Positions 2,436 through 20,931 of a DNA stretch of 64,000 nucleotides are shown here, piece by piece. The notes beneath the pieces are model-generated. The model ran no database searches, was not told where the DNA came from, and saw only the letters and a program-made list of their open reading frames with translations. How positions within the stretch are numbered: position 1 is the first letter of the stretch; every line of letters begins with the position of its first letter. The stretch lies in the IMG/VR virus record IMGVR_UViG_3300025012_000027, positions 1-64,000 of that record; one strand, given 5' to 3'. The position numbers and the translations under genes were made by a program.

Positions 2436-3604
2436 CAATTAATTTTAGAACAACGATTCAAGATCCCACCGGGGCTGGTAGTGATTTAGGAGATCTTTTC
2501 ATTCCTAGATCACTGTTTAGTGATGCTGGATTATGGACGTGGGGCCGTAATAGCTATGGTCAGTTAGGTGATAGCACTGGTGCTAGTAAAAGCTCTCCAG
2601 TACAAACTATCGCCGGTGGTACGAACTGGAAGCTGGTTGCTGGTGGTCGATATCACACAGCCGCCATAAAAACCGATGGTACTTTATGGTCGTGGGGTCG
2701 TAATACCTATGGCGAACTAGGTGATAACACCATCGCCCATAAAAGCTCTCCAGTACAAACTATCGCTGGAGGAACTAACTGGAAACTGGTGGCTAGCGGG
2801 TGGTTGCACACAGCCGCAATTAAAACCGATGGTACTTTATGGACATGGGGATATAATTACTATGGTACACTCGGTGATAACACTATTGCTAATAAAAGCT
2901 CACCAGTACAAACTATCGCTGGAGGAACGAACTGGAAACTGGTAGCTGGTGGCCGATATCACACAGCCGCAATTAAAACCGATGGTACTTTATGGCTGTG
3001 GGGTCGCAATAACTATGGTCAACTAGGTGATAACACTCGCGTCAGTAAAAGCTCTCCTGTACAAACTATAGATGATGAAGGAACCAACTGGAAATCTGTT
3101 TCAGGCGGGACCGCCCACACAGCCGCAATTAAAACCGATGGTACTTTGTGGCTGTGGGGTACTAATTATTATGGTACACTCGGTGATGAAACTATCATCG
3201 ATAAAAGCTCTCCTATACAAACTGTCGCCGGTGGCACGAACTGGAAACTGGTAGCTAGTGGTGATTATTATACTGCTGCCATTAAAACTGACGGTACTTT
3301 ATGGACATGGGGTCGCAATAACTATGGCTCTCTCGGTGACAACACTATTGCTCATAAAAGTTCTCCAATACAAACTATCGCTGGAGGAACGAACTGGAAG
3401 CAGGTTGAATGTGGAACAGATTACATAGCCGCCATTAAAACTGATGGTACTTTATGGACGTGGGGGGCTAATTTCTATGGTATGCTAGGTGATAACACTG
3501 ACATCAGTAAAAGTTCTCCCGTACAAACTATCGCTGGTGGAACGAACTGGAAGTTGATTGGTGGTGGCATGATGCATACTGTAGCCATAAGAGACGATTC
3601 ATAG
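2432..3604 (+). CDS. Second RCC1-repeat beta-propeller protein
   Basis: Seven repeats of the same 51-aa unit as 733..1941. Confidence 0.85.
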   Translation: MTINFRTTIQDPTGAGSDLGDLFIPRSLFSDAGLWTWGRNSYGQLGDSTGASKSSPVQTIAGGTNWKLVAGGRYHTAAIKTDGTLWSWGRNTYGELGDNTIAHKSSPVQTIAGGTNWKLVASGWLHTAAIKTDGTLWTWGYNYYGTLGDNTIANKSSPVQTIAGGTNWKLVAGGRYHTAAIKTDGTLWLWGRNNYGQLGDNTRVSKSSPVQTIDDEGTNWKSVSGGTAHTAAIKTDGTLWLWGTNYYGTLGDETIIDKSSPIQTVAGGTNWKLVASGDYYTAAIKTDGTLWTWGRNNYGSLGDNTIAHKSSPIQTIAGGTNWKQVECGTDYIAAIKTDGTLWTWGANFYGMLGDNTDISKSSPVQTIAGGTNWKLIGGGMMHTVAIRDDS

Positions 3605-3635: not shown

Positions 3636-4199
3636 ATGAAAATAAATATTGGATCTGGTAGTAAGCGATATGATGGTATAATCAACATTGATTCTGATGC
3701 GGGGTCTAACCCAGATTTCGTTGTAAATCTCGAAACTGAGAATCTGCCGTTTGATGACAACAGTGTTGATTACGTCATGGCACATCACATTTTAGAGCAT
3801 TTAGGCGATGGATTCTTTCATTGCCTGAAAGAAATATATCGAGTGTGCAAACATGGTGCGATCATTGATGTGCGTGTCCCACATCCCCGACACGACACGT
3901 TCTTAATTGACCCCACACATAAACGCCCTATATATCCACATACGTTGGATATGTTTTCAAAGGCTCGTAATAAGAGAGACCTTGATAGCAACGGGTGTGA
4001 AACGCCGCTTGGATTTATCAATGATATTGACCTACAGGTGGTTGATCATAATTTTGTTTTAGACGAATACTGGATACAGAAATTCAAACATCTATCTGAG
4101 GATGAATGTGAGCATATTGCTAGATCTATGAATAACGTGATTCTCGAAATATCAATAAAACTGAAAGTGGTTAAGCAAAACAATACTCGCAGAGATTGA
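3636..4199 (+). CDS. Class I SAM-dependent methyltransferase (Methyltransf_11-like)
   Basis: INIGSG motif I, LPFDDNSVD, HILEHL, EIYRVCKHG, DPTH. Confidence 0.8.
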   Translation: MKINIGSGSKRYDGIINIDSDAGSNPDFVVNLETENLPFDDNSVDYVMAHHILEHLGDGFFHCLKEIYRVCKHGAIIDVRVPHPRHDTFLIDPTHKRPIYPHTLDMFSKARNKRDLDSNGCETPLGFINDIDLQVVDHNFVLDEYWIQKFKHLSEDECEHIARSMNNVILEISIKLKVVKQNNTRRD

Positions 4200-4206
4200 A
4201 TATACT

Positions 4207-5523
4207 ATGAATCCATTAGCAACAGTTGAGTTTTTTATACATATAAATCAGTTTGAAAAAGCTAAAATAGTTCTCGATTTATTAAAACCATATGCAAGAT
4301 CCGTGCAAGAGATTGATCAGTTAGGTAAGCTATATGCCGATATACGAGAATTTGCCGACACTCTCGAATTAGGGCAACGGATATATGAGTTAGTTGACCA
4401 CCCTCAAGCAAAGTATGATTCTAGAGTGAACATAATACGAGCATTGCTTAATCTGAATAAGCCAAATGAAGCTCTTGAACTCATTCTGATAAACGAACAA
4501 GAGCAGCCTGACGATCATCCAAATCAGATGGATAAGGCGATGTGTTTTTTCCTATTAGACCAAAAGGATTCTGGCGAAGCCATTCTTAGACAAATATTAT
4601 CTGAGCCGCACACTCAAGATATCGATAATCGGGTGAGGTTCAATCTTGGCACATATGACTTGCGCAACGGTAATTTTAAACAAGGCCTGCGAGAGGTTTT
4701 GCTAGGCGGCAGGAAACTTAACATATGGCATGAATTCAAGTTTCCAAAATCTCAATTGTGGGAAGGCAATCCGCAACCAGGCAAACGCATTCTCGTATGC
4801 GCTGAGGGTGGAATAGGAGATGAGATAATATCGGTTAGATTCATGAAGCATTTGCGCGATGCTGGGATGCTCCCGATTTGGTACACTGATAGAGAAGATA
4901 TTCGGACTATCTTCACTCGGAATGGTTTTGAAACAACCACTAACATAAGCATATTACCGGCCGACTGGTTATGGACGTATTCTATGCCTATACCATCATA
5001 TCTAGATCTATCAGAGGATGCTGTGTGGTATGGTCCATATATTTCACCTACCAATCAAACACCAAAATTATCCACTTCAGGAAAGAAGAAGATTGGTATA
5101 AAGTGTATGGGCAACCCTAAGTATGATCAAGATTTACATAGGACAGTACCTTTCATAGAATTGATAGACAGCATTCCAGATGAATATGAGATATACTCGT
5201 TTCATATAGATGAAGATTTCACCCACCCCAGAGTCATCCAGTTGAAAGATAAGATACACTCGTGGGATGATACCTTGGATTATATAACCCAAATGGATAT
5301 CATTGTTTCTAGCTGTACTTCTTTGATACATGCGGCGGGTGCTATGGGCAAATCATCGATCGTCATTGTGCCTATACTAACGTATTACACATGGGCAAAA
5401 CCTGGTCTGAGGTCTTTGTGGTATGGCGATAATTTACGGGTCTTGAGGCAGGTTGAATATGACAACTGGTCCGCTCCCCTTAATGAACTCAACAAAATAC
5501 TATGCCCGTCAAATACCGTATAA
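4207..5523 (+). CDS. TPR-repeat + glycosyltransferase family 9-like protein
   Basis: Helical N-terminus; WEG..GKRILVCAEGGIGDEI, MDIIVSSCTSLIHAAGAMG, WY..LRVLRQ motifs. Confidence 0.75.
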   Translation: MNPLATVEFFIHINQFEKAKIVLDLLKPYARSVQEIDQLGKLYADIREFADTLELGQRIYELVDHPQAKYDSRVNIIRALLNLNKPNEALELILINEQEQPDDHPNQMDKAMCFFLLDQKDSGEAILRQILSEPHTQDIDNRVRFNLGTYDLRNGNFKQGLREVLLGGRKLNIWHEFKFPKSQLWEGNPQPGKRILVCAEGGIGDEIISVRFMKHLRDAGMLPIWYTDREDIRTIFTRNGFETTTNISILPADWLWTYSMPIPSYLDLSEDAVWYGPYISPTNQTPKLSTSGKKKIGIKCMGNPKYDQDLHRTVPFIELIDSIPDEYEIYSFHIDEDFTHPRVIQLKDKIHSWDDTLDYITQMDIIVSSCTSLIHAAGAMGKSSIVIVPILTYYTWAKPGLRSLWYGDNLRVLRQVEYDNWSAPLNELNKILCPSNTV

Positions 5524-5858
5524 TAAATATCAACTTAACATCCTCGGTGTCCGATGCTCCTATAGCTGATGTGCCATGCAATGGGTGCATTAGGTGCTGT
5601 GAATTATTGACTCCCTTCCTAACCCCCGAAGAACTGAGTTCTGGCCTATACCCTATAAGTCTGATTCAACCGTCTGAAGATGCCGTGTTAGCAACACCTG
5701 ATATAGGCCCTCTGATTTCACTATATCGGAAGCCAGATGGTGGGTGTAGTATGCTAGTCGATGGACAGTGTACAATATATGACATTAGGCCAAAAGCGTG
5801 TCGACAATTCGATTGCCGTAAAGGACATCATCCCAAAATCCCCAACATGACGATATAA
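5502..5858 (+). CDS. YkgJ-family (CxxCxxCC) cysteine-cluster protein
   Basis: CNGCIRCC ... CSML..CTIYDIRPKACRQFDC. Confidence 0.8.
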   Translation: MPVKYRIININLTSSVSDAPIADVPCNGCIRCCELLTPFLTPEELSSGLYPISLIQPSEDAVLATPDIGPLISLYRKPDGGCSMLVDGQCTIYDIRPKACRQFDCRKGHHPKIPNMTI

Positions 5859-5859
5859 T

Positions 5860-6651
5860 ATGGAAAAAACTTATCACTTTCTTTCAGGACTTCCTAGATC
5901 AGGTTCCACCGTTTTAGCATCAATACTGAATCAAAATCCCGAGGTATATGTTACCCCAACTTCACCTATGCTAAACGTGGCAGTAAAAATGCAAGAGGCA
6001 TGGCGCAACGATCCCACGGTTAAAGCAAATTACTACGAAGAACAAGCGCGCGATTTGACTAAAGCTATCCTGCCAGCATTTTGGAAACACCGGCCTGAAT
6101 CTATTATCATCGATAAAGGAAGAGGGTGGGCTAAGAATATGCCAACCGCATCGGCACTGTTTGGTAAAAAAATTAAAGCTATCGTGATGACTCGTGATCT
6201 TCCTAGCATAATGGCTAGTTGGTTGACAATCATCAGAAACCAACCTGGGTGTTTTGTTGATAAGAATCTCTTGTTAACCGGGCATCTCGTTACAGATGAA
6301 AATAGAGTCGGTGAGATGTGGTTTAATATGGTTAAAGATTGTATGGAGGGGCTTCATCAAATAAAGAGAGAGGCGGCCGACCAAATTGTCATCGTAGAAT
6401 ATGACAAATTTATAGAAACCCCGATGGTAGAGCTTGATAGGATTGCAGACTTTCTGCAATTGCCGTCATTCGAGTATGACGTAAATACGATAGAAAATGA
6501 TACAGCTGATGATGATTTGATTGCATGGGGGTTTGAAGGATTACATACCATCAGGCCTGTGTTAGGGAAAACGTCAAAACACCCTCGTGAAGTTTTGGGT
6601 GATATGCTGTATTATCGATTCGTCGAACTTGAAAAACAATACATTCTTTAA
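5860..6651 (+). CDS. Sulfotransferase family protein
   Basis: 5'-PSB motif LSGLPRSGSTVLASILNQNP, IIDKGRGW, MTRDLPSIMAS. Confidence 0.85.
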   Translation: MEKTYHFLSGLPRSGSTVLASILNQNPEVYVTPTSPMLNVAVKMQEAWRNDPTVKANYYEEQARDLTKAILPAFWKHRPESIIIDKGRGWAKNMPTASALFGKKIKAIVMTRDLPSIMASWLTIIRNQPGCFVDKNLLLTGHLVTDENRVGEMWFNMVKDCMEGLHQIKREAADQIVIVEYDKFIETPMVELDRIADFLQLPSFEYDVNTIENDTADDDLIAWGFEGLHTIRPVLGKTSKHPREVLGDMLYYRFVELEKQYIL

Positions 6652-6657
6652 GTTTAT

Positions 6658-7092
6658 ATGAAAAAGATTCTCATTATGGGACTACCTGGATCTGGAAAAA
6701 CCTTTTTAGCGTCTGCTCTGAAAGATCGATTGATCGATTCGAACAAGACCGTTGACTGGTTTAACGCAGATGATATCAGGCGCAGATATGATGATTGGGA
6801 TTTTTCAACCGACGGTCGCATTAGACAGTCCGTGAGGATGGCACAGCTCGCCAATGAATCAGTATCTGATTTTGTAATTGCTGATTTTGTCGCACCGCTC
6901 ATAAAAATGAGGGAAAATTTCAATTCCGATTACACTATATGGGTTGACACGATCGATAAGAGCAGGTATCCAGATACGAATATAGCATTCATCCCGCCAA
7001 CGACGTATGATTTTAGAGTAACTGAGCAGAATTCTGACCATTGGGCTAGTATCATCGCAAATTCTATTCTAAGAGATCGGTGTTGGTTATAG
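6658..7092 (+). CDS. cysC: Adenylyl-sulfate (APS) kinase-like P-loop protein
   Basis: ILIMGLPGSGKT, NADDIR, DFSTDGRIRQ, ADFVAP; adjacent to the sulfotransferase. Confidence 0.75.
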   Translation: MKKILIMGLPGSGKTFLASALKDRLIDSNKTVDWFNADDIRRRYDDWDFSTDGRIRQSVRMAQLANESVSDFVIADFVAPLIKMRENFNSDYTIWVDTIDKSRYPDTNIAFIPPTTYDFRVTEQNSDHWASIIANSILRDRCWL

Positions 7093-7108: not shown

Positions 7109-7203
7109 GCTTAAATAGTATGAGTAACTAATTGGATACCTTATGCGACTAACTCTAGAAGAAACACAATACCTGTTAGATGAATCTACTCAACATCTAA
7201 CCG
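7109..7203 (+). repeat. Copy 1 of late-promoter + 5'-gene repeat
   Basis: 92/95 nt identical to 15353-15447; contains TAAATA 7112-7117 and ATG 7143. Confidence 0.95.
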
Positions 7204-7244
7204 CGCGAGTTGCGGCAATCGATCCAGAAGGAGGTATACTGTGA
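7143..7244 (+). CDS. 33-aa chimeric mini-ORF (N-terminus of gene 15387 fused to unrelated tail); possibly a pseudogene/leader peptide
   Basis: MRLTLEETQYLLDESTQHLTARVAAIDPEGGIL*; its TGA overlaps the GTG start of 7241. Confidence 0.45.
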   Translation: MRLTLEETQYLLDESTQHLTARVAAIDPEGGIL

Positions 7245-7759
7245 AAGCAAGCTACATTTACATTCCGCTCATCGGCCTGTTCAGGGTATTTTTATCATTT
7301 ACTGCGCCAATAGTCGTACTGCTGGCCCTACCGTTTATCAAATGGGATAAAGAGCCTTCCGTTGGTCCACAAAGAACCAATCCTCCAACGCCCACGATCA
7401 TGGGCGATTTCCCGAACTGGCTCTCGTGGCTCAGTACTCCAGATCAACGATTACCATGTGATACAGGTATACCAACATGTAAAGCATGGGTAGATCGGTA
7501 TGGTAAGTGGGTAGCTGCTTGGTTATGGGCTGGAGTGCGAAATCAGTATTTCGGATTCGCTATATGGCTAGGCAACCAAACTTCCAACTATGCTCCCTAC
7601 GACATTGAAGGCTATTGGGAGCGTACCGACCAATATGGTACGATTTGGAGGTATCGGAAGACTTTTGGTAAGATCAGCATCATGACCGGATACAATGTTT
7701 ACGCTATGCTAGATGGATCTTTCCATACAGCGCCAATCCTCACAGTTAAACTTCGTTGA
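7241..7759 (+). CDS. Hypothetical membrane-associated phage protein
   Basis: GGAGG SD before GTG; hydrophobic N-terminus, Trp-rich (WLSWLSTPD, WLWAGVRN). Confidence 0.7.
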   Translation: MKASYIYIPLIGLFRVFLSFTAPIVVLLALPFIKWDKEPSVGPQRTNPPTPTIMGDFPNWLSWLSTPDQRLPCDTGIPTCKAWVDRYGKWVAAWLWAGVRNQYFGFAIWLGNQTSNYAPYDIEGYWERTDQYGTIWRYRKTFGKISIMTGYNVYAMLDGSFHTAPILTVKLR

Positions 7760-7781
7760 CATTATCATTACTGGCTGACAA

Positions 7782-7864
7782 CTTAAATAGTAAGAGTAAC
7801 TAATTGGGATACCTCATGCAACTAACTCTAGAAGACACGCGACAGCTAACCGAGGAACTGCTGC
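7782..7864 (+). repeat. Copy 2 (diverged, 24-nt in-frame deletion) of late-promoter + 5'-gene repeat
   Basis: cttaaatagtaagagtaactaattgggatacctcatgcaactaactctagaaga...gctaaccgaggaactgctgc aligns to 15354 onward. Confidence 0.9.
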
Positions 7865-7908
7865 GGGCGAAAACAACTTCTCGAATCGGTGCTCGATGTA
7901 TCAAGTAA
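7816..7908 (+). CDS. 30-aa mini-ORF derived from the N-terminus of gene 15387
   Basis: MQLTLEDTRQLTEELLRAKTTSRIGARCIK*. Confidence 0.4.
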   Translation: MQLTLEDTRQLTEELLRAKTTSRIGARCIK

Positions 7909-7922
7909 ATTTGGAGTAAAAT

Positions 7923-8552
7923 ATGAATATTGACTTTACCTATGCAATAACAAGCGTCAATCACGCAACAAAAACTATGATGGTATCGTATTCTGCCACC
8001 AATTACCCAACGGTATCCAAAGAGGTGCGCATACCATGGCGTGAAGAAGATCTCGATATCGTATTGCGAGAGTATGCTCCGTACGGCGTGTGGTGGGCAT
8101 ATAATAAGCCAACTAAAGATATTGTTGTAGGTACTAAAGGATTGATCAACTCTCAAAATAAGCCTGCTGTAAAGGTAATTCCACAAACTGATGTAAACAC
8201 CGTTAAAGCAGAGCAAATATCTAAAATTGCGCAATCTAGATATCTGTATGAGACGAGTGGTATAAATATAAACGGCACTCGATTCAAAACGGATCGCGAA
8301 TCGCAGGCAGCTATCACATCAGCATTTATCAGTCTATCGCAGGGATTATTGACTACGGTAGATTGGAAAACTGAACCTTCTGTATGGATTACGTTAGATT
8401 TGCAGAAAATTACTGATGTCTACAATGCAGTTATGACTAAAGTGCAATTGGGGCATACTACAGAAAAAGAATTGGTCACATCTATCAATAACGTCGATGC
8501 CAAATTAGACAACGCTATCAAACTCATTGAGGATATCGTATGGCCTCAATGA
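7923..8552 (+). CDS. DUF4376-domain tail-fibre-associated protein
   Basis: IAQSRYLYETSGININGTRFKTDRESQAAI..VDWKT..IVWP. Confidence 0.75.
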   Translation: MNIDFTYAITSVNHATKTMMVSYSATNYPTVSKEVRIPWREEDLDIVLREYAPYGVWWAYNKPTKDIVVGTKGLINSQNKPAVKVIPQTDVNTVKAEQISKIAQSRYLYETSGININGTRFKTDRESQAAITSAFISLSQGLLTTVDWKTEPSVWITLDLQKITDVYNAVMTKVQLGHTTEKELVTSINNVDAKLDNAIKLIEDIVWPQ

Positions 8553-9448
8553 GTTTGTATGTGCCTTTGCCGGATCAAGAAGTCGGCATTCTATCATATA
8601 AGCCAATATTGGATGAGTTAGACATCACAATTACGTCCATTAAAAATACATCGGCTTATGCTTTTCCTGTATCAAACAGAGGAACTAGCTACTGTGGGGA
8701 TCATCCTAAATACATGTCACTTGAGAGTCTAAATACTCTGACATATAAGAGTGAGCTACATAAAACAGGCATACTTACCATTCCGACAGAAATTGTTCAA
8801 GAAATTGGAGATACTTCTTTATATTTTTTCAAGCCAAATTCTATATTTAGCAACGAACTTGTAAGACGCCCAAGGGTTGCGAGCCCTATCGCCCAGTATG
8901 AAGTGACGTTTTCTGTAAATGAATTCAATGAGATCTATGTGTTTAATACATCGAGACACATATTTAATAATGCAGATACGTCTGGGGCTTGTGTACAGAC
9001 ATCTGAAAATAGTGTAGAATCCATCTATATGATAGATCAAGTGAGACAAGCTGTTATTAGATTAAACGTTCGTGGTGGCATACATAATGTGCAGTTTATA
9101 TATTATAATAACGAATTAGTTTTAATAGACTGGAATGCTAGACCACCAACAGTTCTTACCGAAGGTTTCGCAGCATATAACCATCCTAATATCATTAGTA
9201 CGGTAAGACACGCACTCGGACTCCCAATTCTGCCAAGAGAACCTATGTCTGTTATTTTTAGAGATTATTCGGATAATCCTATACCCGTTTCAAAACGGGA
9301 TCTTATCGTTAGTTTTGGACTACTTCCTAGAAAAGTTTGGGGTAAAGGGATTGATTATCCATTCATACGAGTCAGTGGGCTTGGATCTTCGGATGAAGAG
9401 CTGAATTCGAGATTTGATCAAATGGAACTGGCAGTATTTAGTAATTAA
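8540..9448 (+). CDS. ATP-grasp-fold protein (divergent)
   Basis: FFKP, YEVTF, GIHNVQFIYYNNELVLIDWNARP resemble ATP-grasp motifs. Confidence 0.6.
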   Translation: MASMSLYVPLPDQEVGILSYKPILDELDITITSIKNTSAYAFPVSNRGTSYCGDHPKYMSLESLNTLTYKSELHKTGILTIPTEIVQEIGDTSLYFFKPNSIFSNELVRRPRVASPIAQYEVTFSVNEFNEIYVFNTSRHIFNNADTSGACVQTSENSVESIYMIDQVRQAVIRLNVRGGIHNVQFIYYNNELVLIDWNARPPTVLTEGFAAYNHPNIISTVRHALGLPILPREPMSVIFRDYSDNPIPVSKRDLIVSFGLLPRKVWGKGIDYPFIRVSGLGSSDEELNSRFDQMELAVFSN

Positions 9449-9450
9449 CT

Positions 9451-10527
9451 ATGTTTTATTATTTTGATGATGGTACAAAATGTACATCGAAGATAGAAGC
9501 TATAAAATATGGTTTGGCGAAACAATTAACTCCGAAGTTTTATTATTACGATCACATCTATGAAAAATTAAATTGGAGTGTCGAACCATCTCAAAGTTTA
9601 GATTACTATTATAAAGAACAAGCTCAAAATATTAGAGATAATTATGATTATGTAATTTTAGCATATTCTGGTGGGTATGACTCAACCAATATACTTGAAA
9701 CCTTTCATTTCAATAATATAAAATTAGATAAGATATTGATCGTCGGCGCATTTAAACAAGATAGCTCATATGGAGTCGATGAAAACCATAATGGAGAATT
9801 GTATCATAACGCATTTCCATATGTAAAGGATCTTGGCTTGGACCATATCACTCAAGTTATAGACTATACAGAGTTATTCGATAGCACAAAAAACTTTAGT
9901 ATTTCAGTATATAACGAGAATTGGGTTGATACCATTGGAGCGTGGTTCAGTCCTCATAATTGGTTCTGGAAAGATGTAGAGAGGCACATTGTTCCACTAG
10001 AGTGGAGAGGTAAACGAGTCGCTCTAGTATTTGGTAAAGATAAACCCGGACTGTATCACAATGTTCATGCAACCCGTCGCGGTATAGGAATTCAAGGCGA
10101 TGCCCTTAATCCAACGGGATTTCATTTTAGAGACACGCCGTGTTTAAGTTACGCAGATACTAATGCAGATGAAAGTATTGACAGAGTAAACTTTTACTGG
10201 GATCCTGAAAACCCACAAATTTTATTAAAACAATTGCATGTGATTAAGAGAGTAACTGAAATAAATGAAATTGCTCCGCTCAAGTTACTAAATATAAATG
10301 AAATTGTGTACAGTCTCAAACGACCTTTGTTATTTAAGTCACCGAAGAGCGGTAGTAACTTATTTAGTCTTAGAGATGAATACTTAAAGACCAATAAGGC
10401 ATCTGATGTATTTTCTTTATATGCCGCTGGAATTAATAAGATAGACCGAGAAATAGGGGTAAGTAATATTGGTCCTATATTTTCCAAACATTATAGCATG
10501 CTAAGTGGCTTGCACGCGATAACGTAG
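9451..10527 (+). CDS. PP-loop (adenine nucleotide alpha-hydrolase-like) protein
   Basis: VILAYSGGYDSTNIL PP-loop. Confidence 0.65.
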   Translation: MFYYFDDGTKCTSKIEAIKYGLAKQLTPKFYYYDHIYEKLNWSVEPSQSLDYYYKEQAQNIRDNYDYVILAYSGGYDSTNILETFHFNNIKLDKILIVGAFKQDSSYGVDENHNGELYHNAFPYVKDLGLDHITQVIDYTELFDSTKNFSISVYNENWVDTIGAWFSPHNWFWKDVERHIVPLEWRGKRVALVFGKDKPGLYHNVHATRRGIGIQGDALNPTGFHFRDTPCLSYADTNADESIDRVNFYWDPENPQILLKQLHVIKRVTEINEIAPLKLLNINEIVYSLKRPLLFKSPKSGSNLFSLRDEYLKTNKASDVFSLYAAGINKIDREIGVSNIGPIFSKHYSMLSGLHAIT

Positions 10528-10537
10528 AAAGAATGAT

Positions 10538-11527
10538 ATGACAATAAAAACTTCCGGGTCTCTTTCATTAAATGAAATCAATTCTGAATTTGGGAGAGGG
10601 TATAACTTAAACGCATATAGAGGCACTTCCTATTGGAATAGTAACGCTACTCTGGGTACGTTTTCAAGCGTAGCTATTTCAATCAATGATTTTTTTGGTA
10701 AGGCTCTATCTCGACCACCCATCACCGCTCAAGTATTGGTTGTGGGTGGTGGTGGAGGCGGCGGTTCTGGAACACATGATTCTGTTGGCGGTGGAGGGGG
10801 CGGTGGAGGGGGCGGTCAATTCTTATCATTTGATGTAACATTATACCCCGGTGCTCCAGCTTCAATTAGTATAGGGGGTGGTGGTGCCGGTGGATACTAT
10901 TACATCTACTATACCGGCCCTTATGGTGACCAAGCTAATTATGCGTATGTAGCAGGGAATACTGGTGGATCCAGTTCTGCAGTATTCAATGGATCTACAT
11001 ACACTGCGGTAGGGGGGCTATATGGTCACCAAAGATGGTATAATGGTGAAAGCTTTACTGTTGACCCAACCCCATATGTTGGTGGGGCAGGTGGTTCGGG
11101 TAATGGCGGGGGTGGGTATGCATCTGCAGGTGGATCAGACGGTATTAGAGCAGGCGGGGGTGGTGGTGGTATAGATGATCAATCGACAGCTGGAGTAGGC
11201 GGAGCGGGTCCGCTGTGGTTTAATGGGTCTAGATATTCGGGTGGTGGTGGTGGTGGTGCTGATGGGTCCGGTCAAGCTTCGGGTGGCGCAGGTGGCGGCG
11301 GAACTGGCGGGTCATCTATGAATGGAACGGCAGGCGCAGCCAATACCGGTGGTGGCGGAGGTGGTGGTGGGTCATCGGGTTTTGTAACCAATGCAGGGGC
11401 CGGTGGCTCAGGCATAGTGATCATTAGATATGTTAGCAGTTTCGCATTCTTCAGTGGTGGGTCAGCGTATTCATCTGGTGGCTACATATACCATGTGTTT
11501 ACGTCTAATGCGTCATTTACAACATAA
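10538..11527 (+). CDS. Glycine-rich tail-fibre adhesin (gp38-like architecture)
   Basis: N-terminal SGSLSLNEINSEFG..ISINDFFGK anchor; many poly-Gly runs; GSGIVIIRY..YHVFTS end. Confidence 0.7.
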   Translation: MTIKTSGSLSLNEINSEFGRGYNLNAYRGTSYWNSNATLGTFSSVAISINDFFGKALSRPPITAQVLVVGGGGGGGSGTHDSVGGGGGGGGGGQFLSFDVTLYPGAPASISIGGGGAGGYYYIYYTGPYGDQANYAYVAGNTGGSSSAVFNGSTYTAVGGLYGHQRWYNGESFTVDPTPYVGGAGGSGNGGGGYASAGGSDGIRAGGGGGGIDDQSTAGVGGAGPLWFNGSRYSGGGGGGADGSGQASGGAGGGGTGGSSMNGTAGAANTGGGGGGGGSSGFVTNAGAGGSGIVIIRYVSSFAFFSGGSAYSSGGYIYHVFTSNASFTT

Positions 11528-12345
11528 TGAATTCATATAATAATTGGATCACGTCTAATGTATCTCAACGATTGACTAATCCCTTAGCCAAATTAAAGTT
11601 AGACATGAAAGTTCCTCTATTCGAGCAAAGGAACTTTCATGAATGTGCATCTGAAGCCGCGCAGCTTATTGCAAAAACTCATGATAATATATATGTGGCA
11701 TTAAGTGGAGGTATGGATTCTGAGTATATTGTTAGAACTTTTCATAAAAACAACGTACCGTTCACCCCAATCATATTAGAATGTGGGAATGAGATAGAGA
11801 GAAGGTACGCTTTTAAAGTATGCGAAGAATTGCGGCTATCTCCTGTCGTTCTACACTTATCAGAAGAAGATATGGTAGATAAATTCTATGAGTCAATCCA
11901 CAAAAAACTTAATGGGGTGGGTTATCATGCTACATTGGTTCTAGCTATCGCAGAGTATGTATACAGTAAACGAGGGGTGTTAGTAACGGGGGATGGATTT
12001 TTTGGAGATGGTGATGAATTGGTTACCGATACTGAGTTTGCTTTATACAATGAATGGGATGATTATATAGACTCTTTAGTTGATATAGATAACATTGGGT
12101 TCTTTCTATATACCCCACAATTGTTATATTCGATGTTTCCTAAAACGTATACTGCATGGAATATTATCAAAACAGAGTTGTATGGTATTGAATATAGGCG
12201 CAAGATGCGCCCTAGGTACAGGGACGACACACTAAATAAACTGCACAGTATAAATTCTAAGGTGATTTATACTTTAGGGAATAATATTTGTAATGTTATT
12301 TATACGAAACAAGAAATTTTAGAAATTTTTAATACGAAGGAATGA
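11527..12345 (+). CDS. Second PP-loop (asparagine-synthase-like C domain) protein
   Basis: IYVALSGGMDSEYIV; LVTGDG. Confidence 0.65.
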   Translation: MNSYNNWITSNVSQRLTNPLAKLKLDMKVPLFEQRNFHECASEAAQLIAKTHDNIYVALSGGMDSEYIVRTFHKNNVPFTPIILECGNEIERRYAFKVCEELRLSPVVLHLSEEDMVDKFYESIHKKLNGVGYHATLVLAIAEYVYSKRGVLVTGDGFFGDGDELVTDTEFALYNEWDDYIDSLVDIDNIGFFLYTPQLLYSMFPKTYTAWNIIKTELYGIEYRRKMRPRYRDDTLNKLHSINSKVIYTLGNNICNVIYTKQEILEIFNTKE

Positions 12346-12352
12346 AATTATT

Positions 12353-13084
12353 ATGAAAAAACTTATAGCACTTGCATTATTGGCTATTTCAATTACATGC
12401 TCAGCTGCACCAATTGAGTTTGTTGTAACGGCATCTGCAGGGGGGCCTAATGATACCGTGACTAGAAAAATAGTAGAAAAAATCTCTACTGAAACTGATT
12501 TGACATTTGTTGTGGTGAATAAGCCGGGTGCTGCACATGTAATTGGCTATAACTTTACAATGAATAGTAAAAAACCCACATTAATTTTATCTACCCCTGA
12601 AATTGCGAATCATGACGTGTATTTACAATTAGATGAACTTTTCACAGTAGGGTATTTTACTAACACTATTTTTGTTTCAACAAAGTCAAATATCACAAAC
12701 ATTAATCAATTAGCTGAATTATCCAAACATAGAGACGTGAATTTTGGGAGTGGTGGTCCGGGAACGTATAGTCATAAAGCAATGGAAATTGTGTGTAAGT
12801 CAACTTTAAAATGTCTATCAGTACCATACAAATCTGGAGCAGAGGGTATGTTAGCCGTAATGACTGGGCAAATAGATACATACGCACTAGTATCATATGG
12901 TTCTTATCAATTTTTGAATAATGATAAGGTTAAAGCGATACATGAAATACAAATGCTGAAAAATGATAATTGGTTAAAGCTATTTGCTAAAAATGTATCT
13001 AATGAAGATAGAGAAAAGATTATGCGAGTGCTAAATTCTCTGAATAAAGAATTCTTCTACGAAATGGGATTTGAAAAACAATAG
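12353..13084 (+). CDS. tctC: Tripartite tricarboxylate transporter substrate-binding protein (TctC/Bug family), compact
   Basis: Signal peptide; PIEFVVTASAGGPND, VVNKPGA, FGSGGPG, VPYKSGAEG..AVMTGQID. Confidence 0.85.
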   Translation: MKKLIALALLAISITCSAAPIEFVVTASAGGPNDTVTRKIVEKISTETDLTFVVVNKPGAAHVIGYNFTMNSKKPTLILSTPEIANHDVYLQLDELFTVGYFTNTIFVSTKSNITNINQLAELSKHRDVNFGSGGPGTYSHKAMEIVCKSTLKCLSVPYKSGAEGMLAVMTGQIDTYALVSYGSYQFLNNDKVKAIHEIQMLKNDNWLKLFAKNVSNEDREKIMRVLNSLNKEFFYEMGFEKQ

Positions 13085-13125
13085 TGCTGCGGTGAGTAAT
13101 ATCCAGTAACATATAACTCTAAATA

Positions 13126-14409
13126 ATGACTTTTGCTATATTATTAGGCCTACTTGCAGGCATTTTTAGTGGTATTATACCTGCCGTAGGAAACTTTACT
13201 ACTATTATACTGTTCATACCATTATTAACTAAATTTAATGTGTATGAGTTGGTGTTGTTTTATATGACACTAACGGCGATAAGTCAATACGTCTGTAGCA
13301 TACCCGCTATATTGTTTGGTATACCTGGAGAAACCAGTAGTATTCCGGTCGTCCAAGAATCCAAAAATCTATCCTGGTCTGAAAAGGTCGAGGCCCTCGT
13401 AGGATGCGCATACGGTAGTTTTATAGGTACTGTGAGTGTGTTCGTATGCATTTACGTATTCTCGAGTCATATAGAGCGCATCGTGCAACCGATGTTCACC
13501 TCGTATATCCTAGCCAGTATGCTATGCGTGTCTTTAATAGCCATCTGCTTGGTGTCTAACAAATCTGCGTGGTTCAGTGTGTTCAATGCTATGTTAGGCG
13601 CAGGTCTTGCGCTGATTGGCATAAACACGTTTTTCAACATCCATTTTACGTTTGGTTTTAGCCTCTTCTCTGGAGGAATCCCAGATATCTTAGTCATCAC
13701 CTTTCTGCTAGGATTTCCGGAACTATATCAAAACGCTAAAATACAAGCGGTCAATCTTCAATTGACCCAAATCGATCACAGACCGTTTACAGCCATAGTT
13801 TTGCCTAAGTGGTATGTTAGTTTGAGTGCGACAGTGGTGGGGGCGCTCGGTGGTATTGTGCCCGGTCTTACCTTCATTGCTAGCAGCAGTATCGCACATA
13901 CTGTTTCAAAGTGGGCGAACGTGCCTGCGTTGCAGAGAATATTTGCTAGCGAATCTGCTAACAATGCTGGGTCTGTAACACAGCTATTACCGTTATTATT
14001 GTTTGCTATCCCGATATCAGGGGGTGAGGCACTTATTCTTATGATGTTGAACCAACAGGCATTCAGCGTGTCGACATATAGTTTCTCATCCATATACGAT
14101 TATGTTGGATACAATTTTCTCATTGTAAATATGTTGGGGTTAGCGATAACATTAGCATTATCGTATGCAGCGTCAAAAGTTACTCGCATCAATGTGCGTC
14201 ATATCGTCACTTTTGCGATGATTGTTATGGTGTCGTCTATTATGTATGAGAGTTTTAGTAAAGGGGTGTTTTTAAATTATGTTTTGATATCTGTATTCTT
14301 ATTACCTTTAGGGTGGGTATTACGCAACCGGAATAATATGCCGTTAGTGTTTTCTTTTTTAGTTTTTGATCGGCTCACAGAAGCTGTATATCGTGTTTTT
14401 ATTTTATGA
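13126..14409 (+). CDS. tctA: Tripartite tricarboxylate transporter large permease (TctA family)
   Basis: Polytopic membrane protein; GIIPAVG, PAILFGIPGETSS, GIVPGL, ASESANNAG, PLLLFAIP signatures. Confidence 0.85.
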   Translation: MTFAILLGLLAGIFSGIIPAVGNFTTIILFIPLLTKFNVYELVLFYMTLTAISQYVCSIPAILFGIPGETSSIPVVQESKNLSWSEKVEALVGCAYGSFIGTVSVFVCIYVFSSHIERIVQPMFTSYILASMLCVSLIAICLVSNKSAWFSVFNAMLGAGLALIGINTFFNIHFTFGFSLFSGGIPDILVITFLLGFPELYQNAKIQAVNLQLTQIDHRPFTAIVLPKWYVSLSATVVGALGGIVPGLTFIASSSIAHTVSKWANVPALQRIFASESANNAGSVTQLLPLLLFAIPISGGEALILMMLNQQAFSVSTYSFSSIYDYVGYNFLIVNMLGLAITLALSYAASKVTRINVRHIVTFAMIVMVSSIMYESFSKGVFLNYVLISVFLLPLGWVLRNRNNMPLVFSFLVFDRLTEAVYRVFIL

Positions 14410-15305
14410 GGACTCTTATGTTTTTAAAATTTATCGTTTCATGCGTTGTATTGTTTAGCAGCGCTTTCGCGTCTGCAGATTCTCTCAAATTAGTATCGCC
14501 GGGATCACAATCGGGCGGCTATATGATTCAACTAGCTGCATATGCTAAAGATCTGTCAAAGGACTATACGATTTCGGCGGTAGCGGCTGGTAATCTGTGT
14601 GAAGCTCTCAAACAAGTATCGGAAAATACTCCGACGCTGTTGCTATGGGGCAATGACTATGAAGCTGAGTATCGTCGAAATATCTGCGGTAATGTTCCGA
14701 ATAATCTAAACTTACGGGATATGATTAGGTTTAATACGAACTCATATATGGTTTGCTCGATTACTCACAAGAAGCCCGAGTTTCTAACAAAGACGGTCAC
14801 TGGTAGAATTGCTCATAGCGTTCCTCGCGACATGTTTACGGCAACTATCAATGAGATCAATGCGACCTTTGGGACTAGTTATGCAGCAATCCCATATAAC
14901 GGCACTGGATTGGCTAGATTAGCATTGGTTAGTGGTGAAGTAGATTATGCAATTCTCCCTAACGAGCATCGTCCATATATTGAACAAAAGGGCGGCGATT
15001 GTTTCTATGTGTTAGGCGATACCGGATCAAACTATCCGACGATCGAAGACTTGCAAAAGTTGGCCCCGACGAAAAAACTAACTCTATCGCTGAACCACGG
15101 ATTGTTTCTGTTGCATGCATCAAAGGCTGAACGAGAAAAAATTGTTACTACGCTGAAGGGGTTGCACGCTGACTGCAACAGCGGAATTGGCATGCATACA
15201 AAATGTGGTAAAGACTTTTTCCCTGTTTGGAATATTACTCCAACATTGGCATCGGCGTGGGAAGCTGAGGTGCTCTCATTTGGAAAGTTTTTAGCCAGTA
15301 AGTAA
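14406..15305 (+). CDS. Second, divergent TctC-like periplasmic binding protein
   Basis: Signal peptide; LVSPGSQSGG; IPYNGTGLARLALVSGEVDY. Confidence 0.6.
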   Translation: MRTLMFLKFIVSCVVLFSSAFASADSLKLVSPGSQSGGYMIQLAAYAKDLSKDYTISAVAAGNLCEALKQVSENTPTLLLWGNDYEAEYRRNICGNVPNNLNLRDMIRFNTNSYMVCSITHKKPEFLTKTVTGRIAHSVPRDMFTATINEINATFGTSYAAIPYNGTGLARLALVSGEVDYAILPNEHRPYIEQKGGDCFYVLGDTGSNYPTIEDLQKLAPTKKLTLSLNHGLFLLHASKAEREKIVTTLKGLHADCNSGIGMHTKCGKDFFPVWNITPTLASAWEAEVLSFGKFLASK

Positions 15306-15317
15306 CGTTTTTGCAGC

Positions 15318-15350
15318 GCCAACATCCCGTTAAAATTCGTTGATGTTGGC
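15318..15350. other. Inverted repeat (9-bp stem, 15-nt loop) just upstream of the late promoter
   Basis: gccaacatc ... gatgttggc. Confidence 0.6.
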
Positions 15351-15352
15351 CT

Positions 15353-15447
15353 GCTTAAATAGTATGAGTAACTAATTGGATACCTTATGCAACTAACTCT
15401 AGAAGAAACACAATACCTGTTAGATGAATCTACTCAACCGCTAACCG
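15353..15447 (+). repeat. Copy 3 (intact source) of late-promoter + 5'-gene repeat
   Basis: TAAATA 15356-15361 followed by start of the 749-aa ORF. Confidence 0.95.
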
Positions 15448-20576: not shown

Positions 20577-20586
20577 TACAAGTGTA

Positions 20587-20614
20587 TTGACTTTTAATTT
20601 TTATCTGTTATAAT
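20587..20614 (+). promoter_or_regulatory. Sigma70-type early promoter
   Basis: TTGACT-N16-TATAAT with extended -10 (TGtTATAAT). Confidence 0.8.
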
Positions 20615-20690
20615 TTTATTTGTGCTGTTGAGCGTGGGGCCTGTTCAACGTAAAGCACTTGATAGGCCTGTTCTTAAATTAGGAGTTAGT

Positions 20691-20918: not shown

Positions 20919-20931
20919 TTGACGATCAAAG

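What the first reader, a model, noticed from the sequence alone, without database searches (positions are those of the whole stretch)
8540..12345. ATP-grasp and two PP-loop adenylating enzymes bracketing a glycine-rich adhesin
Seen: a divergent ATP-grasp protein (IDWNARP), an SGGYDS PP-loop, the adhesin and an SGGMDS PP-loop are tightly packed or coupled. The enzyme genes look AT-richer than the core genes by eye. Established: both folds activate carboxylates for amide or ester formation (graspetide ligases, lasso cyclases, Asn synthetase, QueC). Neither PP-loop protein shows a glutaminase domain. Inference: an uncharacterised amide-forming pathway acting on the adhesin, a peptide, or an imported carboxylate.
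Basis: partly seen in the sequence, partly recalled or inferred. Interest (0 to 1): 0.6.

Follow-up and report, generated by a model that had tools for sequence, protein, structure and literature searches.

The report
Phage ligase cassette with carboxylate uptake
A groundwater T4-like phage carries three ATP-dependent carboxylate-activating enzymes beside a tail-fibre-type protein and its own periplasmic carboxylate-uptake genes; pairing of these enzymes with such a binding protein recurs in hundreds of uncultured phages and I found no description of it.

Summary
Window 8540-12345 carries four tightly packed + strand genes of a 216-kb T4-like groundwater phage. They are a true ATP-grasp enzyme with a reduced lid, an AsnB/beta-lactam-synthetase-type PP-loop enzyme without a glutaminase domain, a glycine-rich tail-fibre/adhesin-type protein, and a shorter PP-loop paralogue. 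All four are AT-rich at third codon positions.

The genes sit in a repeat-flanked eight-gene cassette (7868-15352). It starts with a DUF4376 tail-fibre chaperone and ends with a secreted TctC-like binding protein, a TctA permease and a second binding protein.

Across 63 non-redundant related phage loci, the PP-loop family has a secreted TctC-like protein nearby in 44 and directly adjacent in 36. The glycine-rich family is nearby in only 9. The ATP-grasp family is followed by a TctC-like protein of a separate clade in at least 10 of 17 loci.

The best reading is a phage accessory module that imports a carboxylate and activates it for amide formation. The substrate is unknown. Modification of the adhesin is a weaker rival. 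The "7816 peptide" is a duplicated 5' fragment of gene 15387. None of these families occurs in cultured phages, and my literature searches found no account of a phage TctC.

The parts
7109..7203 (+). Direct repeat copy 1: leader plus first codons of gene 15387
   Evidence: 97% identical over 95 nt to 15353-15447. Only three copies exist in the 216-kb genome.
7782..7867 (+). Direct repeat copy 2. It holds the 30-codon '7816 peptide' ORF and marks the left border of the cassette.
   Evidence: 83-96% identical to the other two copies. Sequence read.
7923..8552 (+). DUF4376 protein (209 aa), a probable tail-fibre chaperone
   Evidence: Pfam DUF4376 E 2.1e-15; phrog_10508 tail fiber E 1.6e-21. DUF4376 proteins of Alteromonas phages V22 (gp27) and A5 (gp9) are described as tail-fibre chaperones (PMC7289586, PMC10579305). 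This gene lies directly upstream of the ATP-grasp gene in 8 or more related loci.
8540..9448 (+). g1: ATP-grasp ligase of a new phage family with a reduced lid (B) domain
   Evidence: AF2 pLDDT 95.7. VIA Z 17.6 to PurK, 16.9 to an L-amino-acid ligase, 16.7 to a biotin carboxylase domain. The profile aligns Q185/D197/N199/R201 with CPS Q829/E841/N843/R845. K98, D197, W198, N199 are nearly invariant and R201 invariant in 40 relatives. No Pfam or PHROG hit.
9451..10527 (+). g2: PP-loop A, an AsnB/beta-lactam-synthetase-type adenylating domain without a glutaminase domain
   Evidence: AF2 pLDDT 92.1. VIA Z 11.3, 11.2 and 9.4 to beta-LS, AsnB and CarA, over model residues 1-342. S73, G75, D77, D93, D138, G195, K198, P199 and D228 are invariant in 65 sequences. 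At least 537 relatives in IMG/VR; none in cultured phages.
10538..11527 (+). g3: glycine-rich tail-fibre/adhesin-type protein
   Evidence: Pfam Gly_rich_2 E 1.2e-14. Its N-terminal domain of about 100 aa is shared with proteins that precede DUF4376 chaperones in other phages. Some of those hit tail-fibre PHROGs, and the genes at the same position in L094 and L095 hit Pfam GP38.
11527..12345 (+). g4: PP-loop B, a shorter paralogue of g2
   Evidence: Pfam Asn_synthase E 3.5e-4, 20.8 bits against a cut-off of 21. The profile hits NH3-dependent NAD synthetase 3p52 at E 0.0045. hhalign to the g2 family gives 96.6%. S60, G61, G62, D64 and S65 are invariant. Present in 37 of 63 non-redundant g2 loci.
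12353..13084 (+). Secreted TctC-like solute-binding protein (243 aa, Sec-type signal peptide)
   Evidence: Pfam TctC E 6.1e-9, 36.2 bits against a cut-off of 27. PDB hits to TTT binding proteins: 4x9t at 8.7e-10, then BugD, TphC and Bug27. 64 of 66 family members have a hydrophobic N-terminal signal. It sits in the short clade linked to the PP-loop genes.
13126..14409 (+). TctA-type permease (427 aa)
   Evidence: Pfam TctA E 7.4e-39, covering profile positions 2-412 of 423.
14406..15305 (+). Second, very divergent TctC-like secreted protein (299 aa)
   Evidence: Pfam TctC E 0.015, below the cut-off. Signal-peptide-like N-terminus. It groups loosely with other TctA-adjacent copies on a long branch.
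15353..15447 (+). Direct repeat copy 3: the true 5' end of gene 15387-17636 and the right border of the cassette

Best explanation
The four genes belong to an eight-gene, repeat-flanked accessory cassette (about 7868-15352) in the hyperplastic tail-fibre region of a T4-like groundwater myophage. The cassette merges two modules that are each widespread in uncultured phages. One is [DUF4376 fibre chaperone]-[ATP-grasp]-[secreted TctC-like protein]. The other is [PP-loop A]-[PP-loop B]-[secreted TctC-like protein], here together with a TctA permease.

Proposed mechanism: during infection the phage exports its own TctC-family binding protein to the host periplasm. There it captures a carboxylate-bearing solute and hands it to a tripartite tricarboxylate-type permease, either the phage's TctA or the host's TctAB. 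In the cytoplasm the carboxylate is activated by the phage enzymes: as an acyl-phosphate by the ATP-grasp enzyme, and as an acyl-adenylate by the AsnB-type PP-loop enzymes. It is then resolved by ammonia or an amine into an amide. No glutaminase is encoded, so glutamine is not the nitrogen donor unless a host subunit is recruited.

Shown: the folds, the intact nucleotide and metal motifs, the signal peptides, the gene order and the comparative linkage. Inferred: transport, the order of steps, amide formation and joint action of the enzymes. The substrate and product are unknown. The glycine-rich protein is most likely a fibre/adhesin that is a positional neighbour rather than the substrate.
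For: Folds: g1 is an ATP-grasp with the Q/D/N/R metal-phosphate quartet and K98 conserved. g2 is an AsnB/beta-LS-type synthetase domain with an invariant PP-loop and a G-x-D-K-P motif. g4 is a paralogue.

Transport parts: TctC is above the Pfam cut-off and matches solved TTT binding proteins. TctA is full length. Signal peptides occur in 64 of 66 phage TctC-like proteins.

Linkage: among 63 non-redundant g2-family loci, TctC is present in 44 and directly adjacent to a g2-family gene in 36. With 4 kb or more on both sides, it is present in 32 of 42. The A-T adjacency persists in at least six different flanking gene backbones. The ATP-grasp family is followed directly by TctC in at least 10 of 17 loci and by TctA in one. 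ATP-grasp-linked TctCs form one clade (SH-aLRT 100), distinct from the PP-loop-linked clades.

Unit: genes 8540-13084 share an unusually low GC3, and the cassette is bracketed by direct repeats.

Precedent: a phage-encoded binding protein that plugs into a host transporter is known from cyanophage PstS (bioRxiv 10.1101/2021.07.20.453049).
Against: No substrate is identified and nothing was assayed. No RNA run holds the region. Most loci carry only the binding protein (TctA in 5 of 63, no TctB here), so uptake depends on an unverified fit to host permeases. The short TctC-like proteins (about 243 aa) lack part of the usual C-terminal region. The cassettes always sit next to tail-fibre genes, which also fits a role in host recognition or the envelope. 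The related loci also hold oxygenases (Rieske, fatty-acid-hydroxylase-like, 2OG-Fe) and a twitch radical SAM enzyme. That suggests a longer tailoring pathway than simple assimilation. The ATP-grasp lacks the usual glycine-rich lid loop, so its activity is not assured. Related phages share labels on the TctC tree, so the clade pattern alone does not prove co-evolution.
Confidence: 0.45

Rival explanations
1. Protein modification: the ATP-grasp and PP-loop enzymes modify the glycine-rich adhesin or another fibre component after translation. Examples would be side-chain amidation, isopeptide or ester cross-links, or C-terminal amino-acid addition, by analogy with RimK/TTL-type ATP-grasp enzymes, graspetide ligases and lasso cyclases.
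For: g3 lies between g2 and g4 here, in close relative L011 and in L012, and directly upstream of g2 in L020 and L014-L016. The ATP-grasp gene overlaps the DUF4376 chaperone gene and follows a glycine-rich or GP38-type fibre gene in many loci. AsnB-type and ATP-grasp enzymes are known to make peptide cross-links (established knowledge).
Against: The glycine-rich N-terminal family is present in only 9 of 63 non-redundant g2 loci, against 44 for TctC. No RiPP recognition element, leader peptidase or precursor was seen in the Pfam and NCBIfam scans of neighbours. The lasso-cyclase model scores 11 bits against a cut-off of 525. The 7816 ORF is a duplication scar. This reading leaves the conserved TctC and TctA partners unexplained.
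Confidence: 0.13
2. Envelope or receptor remodelling: the enzymes amidate carboxylates of host surface polymers or their precursors (uronic acids of LPS or capsule, peptidoglycan stem peptides). This would block superinfection or stop progeny from adsorbing to debris, with the secreted TctC-like protein acting in the periplasm.
For: The cassette lies beside receptor-binding genes, where exclusion and conversion genes often sit (established knowledge, for example T5 llp next to its receptor-binding gene). Upstream neighbours in the window are a sulfotransferase, an APS-kinase-like kinase and a methyltransferase, which are typical glycan-decorating functions. AsnB-type enzymes amidate sugar acids and meso-diaminopimelate in bacteria (established knowledge, not tested here).
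Against: A full-length TctA permease in this and several other loci points to import. No glycosyltransferase, flippase or Wzx/Wzy-type gene was found in the cassette. The upstream sulfation genes lie outside the repeat-bounded cassette and are not conserved in related loci.
Confidence: 0.15
3. No joint pathway: the genes are independent accessory genes that collect in the hyperplastic region after the fibre genes. The window's arrangement would then be a chance merger of unrelated cassettes.
For: The ATP-grasp and PP-loop families co-occur only in the window and its close relative L011: 1 of 63 groups. GC3 differs between genes 8540-13084 and the TctA and second TctC genes. The direct repeats suggest stepwise insertion. 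There is no promoter or terminator signal above chance.
Against: The pairings A-TctC, A-B and ATP-grasp-TctC each recur across several different phage backbones, far beyond this genome. The binding-protein clades also track the enzyme class.
Confidence: 0.15
4. Nucleic-acid modification: the PP-loop proteins act on tRNA (TilS, TtuA or MnmA-like) or on 7-deazaguanine precursors (QueC-like) for the phage's 24 tRNAs or its DNA.
For: There are weak QueC and tRNA_Me_trans Pfam hits in some g4 relatives. TilS and NcsA appear at VIA Z 8.1. The genome has 24 tRNAs, including three with a CAT anticodon.
Against: AsnB, beta-LS and CarA score clearly higher (Z 9.4-11.3) and align over the whole protein. 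The genome has no TGT/DpdA or QueC. The conserved partner is a secreted solute-binding protein, not a nucleic-acid enzyme.
Confidence: 0.05

Closest known systems
Class II asparagine synthetase superfamily, synthetase domain (AsnB, beta-lactam synthetase, carbapenam synthetase, TsnB9)
   Same: g2 has the same PP-loop ATP-pyrophosphatase fold over its whole length (VIA Z 11.3-8.9). It has an SGGxDS loop and a later invariant Gly/Asp motif. g4 is borderline on Pfam Asn_synthase. The expected chemistry is carboxylate adenylation followed by attack of a nitrogen nucleophile.
   Different: There is no N-terminal glutaminase domain; only a vestige of about 45 residues aligns to its end. Sequence identity is 9-13%. 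g2 has no Pfam or NCBIfam hit. The families are virus-only, occur as 2-3 paralogues per locus, and are coupled to secreted TctC-like proteins.
PurK / biotin carboxylase / L-amino-acid ligase branch of the ATP-grasp superfamily
   Same: g1 shares the three-layer ATP-grasp architecture (Z 17.6-15, 275-290 residues aligned). It also has the Q/E(D)/N/R metal and phosphate site.
   Different: Identity is 8-12%, and no ATP-grasp Pfam model reaches significance. The protein is about 60-90 residues shorter. The glycine-rich lid loop after the ATP-binding lysine is absent. The genomic context is a fibre chaperone plus TctC, not purine or fatty-acid synthesis.
Cyanophage PstS (a phage-encoded periplasmic binding protein that works with the host transporter)
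   Same: A lytic T4-like phage encodes a secreted solute-binding protein as an accessory gene (10.1101/2021.07.20.453049).
   Different: The transporter class differs (TTT, not ABC) and the solute differs (a carboxylate, not phosphate). Here the binding protein is genetically coupled to cytoplasmic ligases and sometimes to its own permease.
Bacterial tripartite tricarboxylate transporters (TctCBA, Bug proteins)
   Same: TctC and TctA both pass Pfam thresholds. The TctC matches solved Bug/TTT binding proteins.
   Different: No TctB was found. The first binding protein is short (243 aa) and the second is very divergent. The genes are phage-borne; none was found in 50,697 cultured-phage records.
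Fibre plus DUF4376 chaperone host-recognition modules (Alteromonas phages V22 and A5); gp38-type glycine-rich adhesins of T4-type phages
   Same: A DUF4376 protein of about 200 aa follows a fibre/adhesin gene (PMC7289586, PMC10579305). Glycine-rich motifs occur in adhesins (PMC3157838). The fibre genes at the same position in L094 and L095 hit Pfam GP38.
   Different: In the window the chaperone gene is not directly after g3, and the enzymes lie between them. The ATP-grasp and TctC genes appended to this module are not part of the described systems.
Lasso-peptide and graspetide RiPP systems
   Same: They use the same two enzyme superfamilies to form intramolecular amide or ester bonds.
   Different: No precursor peptide, recognition element or leader protease was found. 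The lasso-cyclase model is far below its cut-off. Graspetide ligases are not among the top 50 structural matches.

Membership tests
ATP-grasp superfamily (g1) | ATP-grasp fold spanning the N, central and C domains | tested here: met
   AF2 pLDDT 95.7. Foldseek PDB E 1.6e-11. VIA Z 17.6, with 290 of 302 residues aligned to PurK.
ATP-grasp superfamily (g1) | Conserved Mg/phosphate site (Gln ... Glu-x-Asn-x-Arg) and ATP-binding Lys | tested here: met
   The profile alignment to E. coli CPS places Q185, D197, N199 and R201 on Q829, E841, N843 and R845. K98, D197 and N199 are nearly invariant and R201 invariant. Glu is replaced by Asp.
ATP-grasp superfamily (g1) | Flexible glycine-rich lid (B domain) that closes over ATP | tested here: not met
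   Only about 8 residues separate the K98 strand from the next core strand, and no glycine-rich loop is present. Longer relatives have an insert of about 35 residues that also lacks a glycine-rich loop.
PurK (N5-CAIR synthetase) | Sequence membership (Pfam/NCBIfam model) and a purine-pathway context | tested here: not met
   No Pfam or NCBIfam hit apart from CPS at E 0.026. Identity is 8-12%. The neighbours are fibre and Tct genes.
Asparagine synthetase B family (g2, g4) | PP-loop SGGxDS in a synthetase domain of AsnB type | tested here: met
   The motifs are invariant. g2 has VIA Z 11.2 to AsnB residues 144-515. g4 scores 20.8 bits on Pfam Asn_synthase against a cut-off of 21.
Asparagine synthetase B family (g2, g4) | N-terminal Ntn glutaminase domain with catalytic Cys | tested here: not met
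   The proteins are 358 and 272 aa long and the PP-loop is at residues 73 and 60. There is no GATase_7 or GATase hit in the whole genome.
Beta-lactam / carbapenam synthetase | Catalytic Tyr-Glu dyad and Lys of beta-LS; a beta-amino-acid substrate pocket | not tested
   Only fold-level matches were obtained. No residue-level superposition was available.
Lasso peptide cyclase system | Cyclase model score, precursor peptide, and a leader protease or recognition element nearby | tested here: not met
   NF033535 scores 11.1 bits against a cut-off of 525. No such neighbours were found. The 7816 ORF is a duplication scar.
QueC / 7-deazaguanine pathway | A QueC model hit, with TGT/DpdA and the other pathway genes present | tested here: not met
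   No QueC or TGT hit in the genome. Only weak QueC hits occur in some g4 relatives.
Tripartite tricarboxylate transporter | TctC binding protein with a signal peptide | tested here: met
   Pfam 36.2 bits against a cut-off of 27. PDB TTT binding proteins match at E 1e-9. A signal peptide is present.
Tripartite tricarboxylate transporter | TctA large permease and TctB small subunit | tested here: inconclusive
   TctA is present at E 7.4e-39. TctB was not found at E 0.1, but the TctB model is weak even in control genomes.
Tail-fibre chaperone DUF4376 module | A protein of about 200 aa with a C-terminal DUF4376, encoded directly after its fibre gene | tested here: inconclusive
   The domain is present at E 2.1e-15. 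In the window, however, the gene before it is a DUF7338 membrane protein in a separate repeat-bounded cassette, and the glycine-rich gene lies two genes downstream.

The most novel reading that the evidence does not exclude
The ligases build an amide-linked product from the carboxylate captured by the matched TctC-like protein, and that product is attached to the receptor-binding fibre or to the host receptor. Nutrient capture would then be mechanistically tied to host recognition. This would explain why both cassette types always sit at the end of fibre/chaperone modules, and why a lid-less ATP-grasp (a lid may be unnecessary if a macromolecule covers the active site) is translationally coupled to the fibre chaperone.
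Probability: 0.08. Interest if true: 0.85.

Novelty: new variant of a known kind. Interest (0 to 1): 0.6.

Why it matters
Phage accessory metabolic genes are usually recognised because they resemble host enzymes. Here, two virus-only enzyme families are each wired to a secreted TctC-family binding protein. One is an AsnB-type PP-loop family with at least 537 relatives in IMG/VR. The other is a lid-reduced ATP-grasp family. Neither pairing occurs in the 50,697 cultured-phage records searched, and the literature searches found no account of a phage TctC.

If the capture-and-ligate reading is right, this is a common but unrecognised way for aquatic and groundwater phages to tap an external carboxylate pool during infection. 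It would also give direct handles for finding the substrate, namely the binding protein and the ligases. If the enzymes instead modify fibres or receptors, it would be a new mechanism in host-range biology. In either case the families are good targets for biochemical characterisation.

Tried and rejected
- Cultured phages: blastn and tblastn of the region and of g1, g2, g4 and TctC found no match.
- Single-sequence and profile searches of the PDB with g2 and its family gave no meaningful hit. Only structure comparison placed it.
- PADLOC defence models: no hit for any of the eight proteins.
- Sigma-70 promoter, intrinsic terminator and T4-type late-promoter (TATAAATA) scans gave no more sites than in shuffles, so operon structure is inferred from packing only.
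- Bacterial and archaeal genomes hold only two short MAG contigs with g2 relatives, probably binned phage DNA. No cellular context was therefore available.
- Complex prediction on g2 plus g4 (a heterodimer idea) gave no verdict (score 0.00). This is not evidence either way.
- The search for related loci with the full ATP-grasp alignment failed for lack of a conserved stretch. It was redone with two sub-alignments.
- The careful TctC tree did not finish in time, so the quick tree was used.
- A fuzzy-regex scan of all loci for the repeat timed out. A BLAST against L011 and L093 showed the repeat is absent there.
- Literature searches for phage TctC or a TTT accessory gene found nothing relevant.
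- The N-terminal extension of some ATP-grasp relatives matches only phrog_7759 of unknown function, so there is no Rosetta-stone clue.
- The purine-pathway (PurK) and NAD-salvage (NadE/Bug27) ideas were considered but have no support beyond fold-level resemblance.

Full report
**What the window is.** The window is the first 64 kb of a 216,115-bp IMG/VR virus record that CheckV rates complete. Baseplate and fibre genes show that it is a T4-like myovirus. Its gp6-type baseplate wedge protein is 35-37% identical to those of Methylophilales phage Melnitz, Pelagibacter phage Mosig and cyanomyophages. The DNA occurs at near identity in groundwater and sediment metagenomes from three samples of two studies. 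Independent contig pieces bridge every gene junction between 7718 and 13500, so the arrangement is not an assembly chimera. Only genetic code 11 was used.

**The observation.** All genes of the finding are real, co-directional and tightly packed.
- DUF4376 gene 7923-8552 overlaps g1 (8540-9448) by 13 nt.
- g2 (9451-10527) follows after 2 nt.
- g3 (10538-11527) follows after 10 nt.
- g4 (11527-12345) overlaps g3 by 1 nt.
- A TctC-like gene (12353-13084) follows after 7 nt.

The quoted motifs are present. The enzyme genes are AT-rich. Gene GC is 0.344-0.374 against a genome gene mean of 0.434 (sd 0.037). GC3 of the five genes from 8540 to 13084 is 0.25-0.32, which puts them in the lowest 1-6% of 226 genes. 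The glycine-rich gene is one of the five; its overall GC of 0.50 is carried by Gly codons. The TctA gene and the second TctC-like gene are genome-like.

**g1 is an ATP-grasp enzyme.** It has no Pfam, PHROG or NCBIfam assignment and only two word-search relatives. The exhaustive search found 43 cluster representatives. With that alignment, AF2 gives pLDDT 95.7.
- The model matches PurK, L-amino-acid ligases, PylC, biotin carboxylase and CPS: Foldseek E 1.6e-11; VIA Z 17.6, rmsd 4.7, 290 residues aligned.
- The family profile hits CPS at E 0.002. It aligns Q185, D197, N199 and R201 with CPS Q829, E841, N843 and R845. By established knowledge these are the metal and phosphate ligands of that ATP site.
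- K98, D197, W198, N199 and R201 are invariant or nearly so.
- The usual glycine-rich lid is missing. Only about eight residues link the K98 strand to the next core strand.

g1 is therefore a divergent ATP-grasp with an intact metal site and a reduced lid.

**g2 and g4 are PP-loop enzymes of the AsnB type.** g2 has no family hit, and neither its sequence nor its profile finds anything meaningful in the PDB. It belongs to a large family: 365 proteins in the word search and at least 537 stretches in IMG/VR.
- AF2 gives pLDDT 92.1.
- Best structural matches are beta-lactam synthetase (Z 11.3), AsnB (11.2), human ASNS (10.9), carbapenam synthetase (9.4) and TsnB9 (8.9). They cover model residues 1-342 against chain residues of about 142-515.
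- Other PP-loop enzymes (NcsA, TilS, NadE, LarE, GMP synthetase) score 7-8 over the core only.

g2 is thus an AsnB-type synthetase domain with only a vestige of the N-terminal domain. In 65 sequences, S73, G75, D77, D93, D138, G195, K198, P199 and D228 are invariant.

g4 scores just under the Pfam Asn_synthase cut-off. Its profile hits NH3-dependent NAD synthetase at E 0.0045. It is homologous to g2 across the PP-loop half (hhalign 96.6%). Atlas clusters of g4 length match the g2 model at TM 0.59-0.73. No glutaminase domain or stand-alone amidotransferase exists anywhere in the genome.

**g3 is probably a fibre/adhesin.** It passes Pfam Gly_rich_2. Its N-terminal domain of about 100 residues recurs in proteins that sit directly upstream of DUF4376 genes in other phages. 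Some of these hit tail-fibre PHROGs, including one annotated "host specificity", and the fibre genes at the same position in L094 and L095 hit Pfam GP38. DUF4376 proteins of about 200 aa are described as tail-fibre chaperones in Alteromonas phages V22 and A5 (PMC7289586, PMC10579305). Glycine-rich motifs are typical of gp38-type adhesins (PMC3157838).

**The unit is larger than the finding.** Downstream lie three more genes:
- a secreted TctC-family binding protein (Pfam above cut-off; solved Bug/TTT binding proteins at E 1e-9);
- a full-length TctA permease (E 7.4e-39);
- a second, very divergent secreted TctC-like protein.

Three direct copies of the 5' end of gene 15387 (leader plus the first 18-30 codons) lie at 7109-7203, 7782-7867 and 15353-15447, and nowhere else in the genome. 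They bracket two inserted cassettes: 7204-7781 (one DUF7338 gene) and 7868-15352 (the eight genes from DUF4376 to the second TctC). This resembles the repeat-mediated modular shuffling described for T4-type hyperplastic regions (PMC2839356, PMC4122927), although these repeats include coding sequence.

**Comparative genomics of the PP-loop family.** I clustered all ORFs of 79 IMG/VR loci plus the window. After collapsing loci whose g2-family anchors are 90% or more identical, 63 groups remain.

| Feature in the locus | Groups (of 63) |
|---|---|
| TctC-like protein present | 44 |
| TctC-like directly adjacent to a g2-family gene | 36 |
| Two or more g2-family paralogues | 42 |
| g4 family present | 37 |
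| Glycine-rich N-terminal family present | 9 |
| TctA present | 5 |
| ATP-grasp present | 1 (the window) |

Among groups with 4 kb or more on both sides, 32 of 42 have a TctC-like protein. The TctC-A adjacency is seen in at least six different flanking gene backbones, so it is more than inherited synteny. Of 66 TctC-like proteins, 64 begin with a Sec-type hydrophobic signal.

Related loci often add a short fatty-acid-hydroxylase-like protein or a Rieske protein between A and B. They can also add a 2OG-Fe oxygenase and a twitch radical SAM enzyme (NF033640). The window's genome lacks these. Fibre-type genes (collagen-like, PHROG tail fibre) commonly lie upstream.

**Comparative genomics of the ATP-grasp family.** In 17 loci from assemblies and IMG/VR, the recurring order is fibre/adhesin, DUF4376, ATP-grasp, TctC-like. 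The TctC-like gene directly follows in at least 10 loci. TctA follows in one. Only the window and its 70%-identical relative L011 have the PP-loop block in between. Some of these contigs are podovirus-like (SU10-type portal, with lysis genes next), so the cassette crosses phage families.

On a quick maximum-likelihood tree of 86 TctC-like proteins, the ATP-grasp-linked ones form a single clade (SH-aLRT 100). The window's first TctC sits in a clade of short, PP-loop-linked proteins. The second sits on a long branch with other TctA-adjacent copies. Related phages share labels, so this shows consistent pairing but not proven co-evolution.

**Interpretation.** Two unrelated carboxylate-activating enzyme classes are each tied to their own clade of secreted carboxylate-binding proteins. 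Some phages, this one included, also carry the permease. The simplest reading is an accessory capture-and-ligate module. The binding protein takes a carboxylate in the periplasm, a TTT permease imports it, and the cytoplasmic enzymes convert it by way of an acyl-phosphate or acyl-adenylate into an amide. The nitrogen donor would be ammonia or an amine, because no glutaminase is encoded. Cyanophage PstS is the precedent for a phage-encoded binding protein working with a host transporter (10.1101/2021.07.20.453049).

The steps beyond folds, motifs, signal peptides and linkage are inference, and the substrate is unknown. I put this reading at about 0.45. The rivals are:
- envelope or receptor remodelling beside the receptor-binding genes (0.15);
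- no joint pathway (0.15);
- modification of the adhesin (0.13);
- nucleic-acid modification (0.05). The last is disfavoured by the structural ranking and by the absence of TGT/DpdA and QueC, although the phage has 24 tRNAs.

**Comparison and novelty.** g1 and g2/g4 work like ATP-grasp and AsnB-type ligases, but they are not members of any curated family. PurK, AsnB proper, lasso cyclase and QueC each fail a defining feature (see the membership table). None of g1, g2, g4 or the TctC-like protein has a relative in 50,697 cultured-phage records. Cellular genomes hold only two short MAG contigs that are probably phage DNA. Atlas neighbours are all viral and unnamed. The literature searches found no account of a phage TctC, and the DUF4376 papers that turned up do not mention these genes. 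I class the finding as a new variant of known kinds: new families of known enzyme folds in a previously undescribed but widespread phage cassette.

**Limits.** Nothing was assayed. No RNA run holds the region. Promoter and terminator scans are uninformative. My ORF calling masked a few genes behind spurious opposite-strand ORFs, so counts of adjacency are lower bounds. g4 and the TctC-like proteins were not folded. The g2-g4 complex prediction gave no verdict.

Noticed in passing
window 7109-7203, 7782-7867, 15353-15447: Three direct copies (83-97% identical) of the leader plus first 18-30 codons of gene 15387-17636. They occur nowhere else in the 216-kb genome and bracket two inserted cassettes. 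The 30-codon ORF at 7816 is the truncated middle copy.
   Followed up: yes
window 3636-7092: A run of decorating enzymes just upstream: a methyltransferase (3636-4199), a TPR protein (4207-5523), a CxxCxxCC Fe/Zn-binding protein (5502-5858), a sulfotransferase (5860-6651) and an APS-kinase-like P-loop kinase (6658-7092). Together they look like a possible phage-encoded sulfation set.
   Followed up: partly
window 80-3604: A second DUF4376 protein (80-733) is followed by two RCC1-repeat beta-propeller proteins (733-1941 and 2432-3604; Pfam RCC1-like domain (WD40_RLD) E 7e-78 and 1.2e-120). RCC1 propellers next to a fibre chaperone may be receptor-binding proteins.
   Followed up: no
window 15387-17636: A 749-aa protein has only a weak leucine-rich-repeat-variant hit. 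Its 5' end is the sequence that was duplicated twice upstream.
   Followed up: partly
related loci, e.g. L003:5471-5914, L039:8071-8928, L044:11926-12546, L003:6320-7660: In related phages a 148-aa fatty-acid-hydroxylase-like protein or a 285-aa Rieske protein alternates at the same position between PP-loop A and B. A 2OG-Fe oxygenase and an N-terminal-twitch radical SAM enzyme (NF033640, E 2e-83) are frequent neighbours. This hints at an oxidative tailoring pathway that the window's phage lacks.
   Followed up: partly
proteins P0149, P0155, P0160, P0165, P0170: Some ATP-grasp relatives (about 450 aa) carry an N-terminal extension of about 130 residues that matches phrog_7759 of unknown function.
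   Followed up: partly
genome G000:C1 149314-165700: The phage carries 24 tRNA genes in one minus-strand cluster outside the window. Three have a CAT anticodon, and one of these could be a tRNA-Ile2 that needs lysidine.
   Followed up: no
L012 (CAZKLA010000077.1) and L013 (CAIUKX010000168.1): The only 'genome' hits for the PP-loop family are 6.8-kb and 1.9-kb contigs binned into an Aquiluna MAG and a Flavobacteriales MAG. Their gene content (PD-(D/E)XK nuclease, PP-loop A, glycine-rich protein, PP-loop B, TctC) looks like phage DNA mis-binned into MAGs.
   Followed up: partly
window 19319-23736: A PD-(D/E)XK nuclease (19319-20059), a ClpP-like protease (19929-20576), a DNA-transfer-protein PHROG (20919-22556) and PhoH (22870-23736, minus strand) lie here. 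The nuclease and PhoH are syntenic with the PP-loop cassette in many related phages.
   Followed up: no
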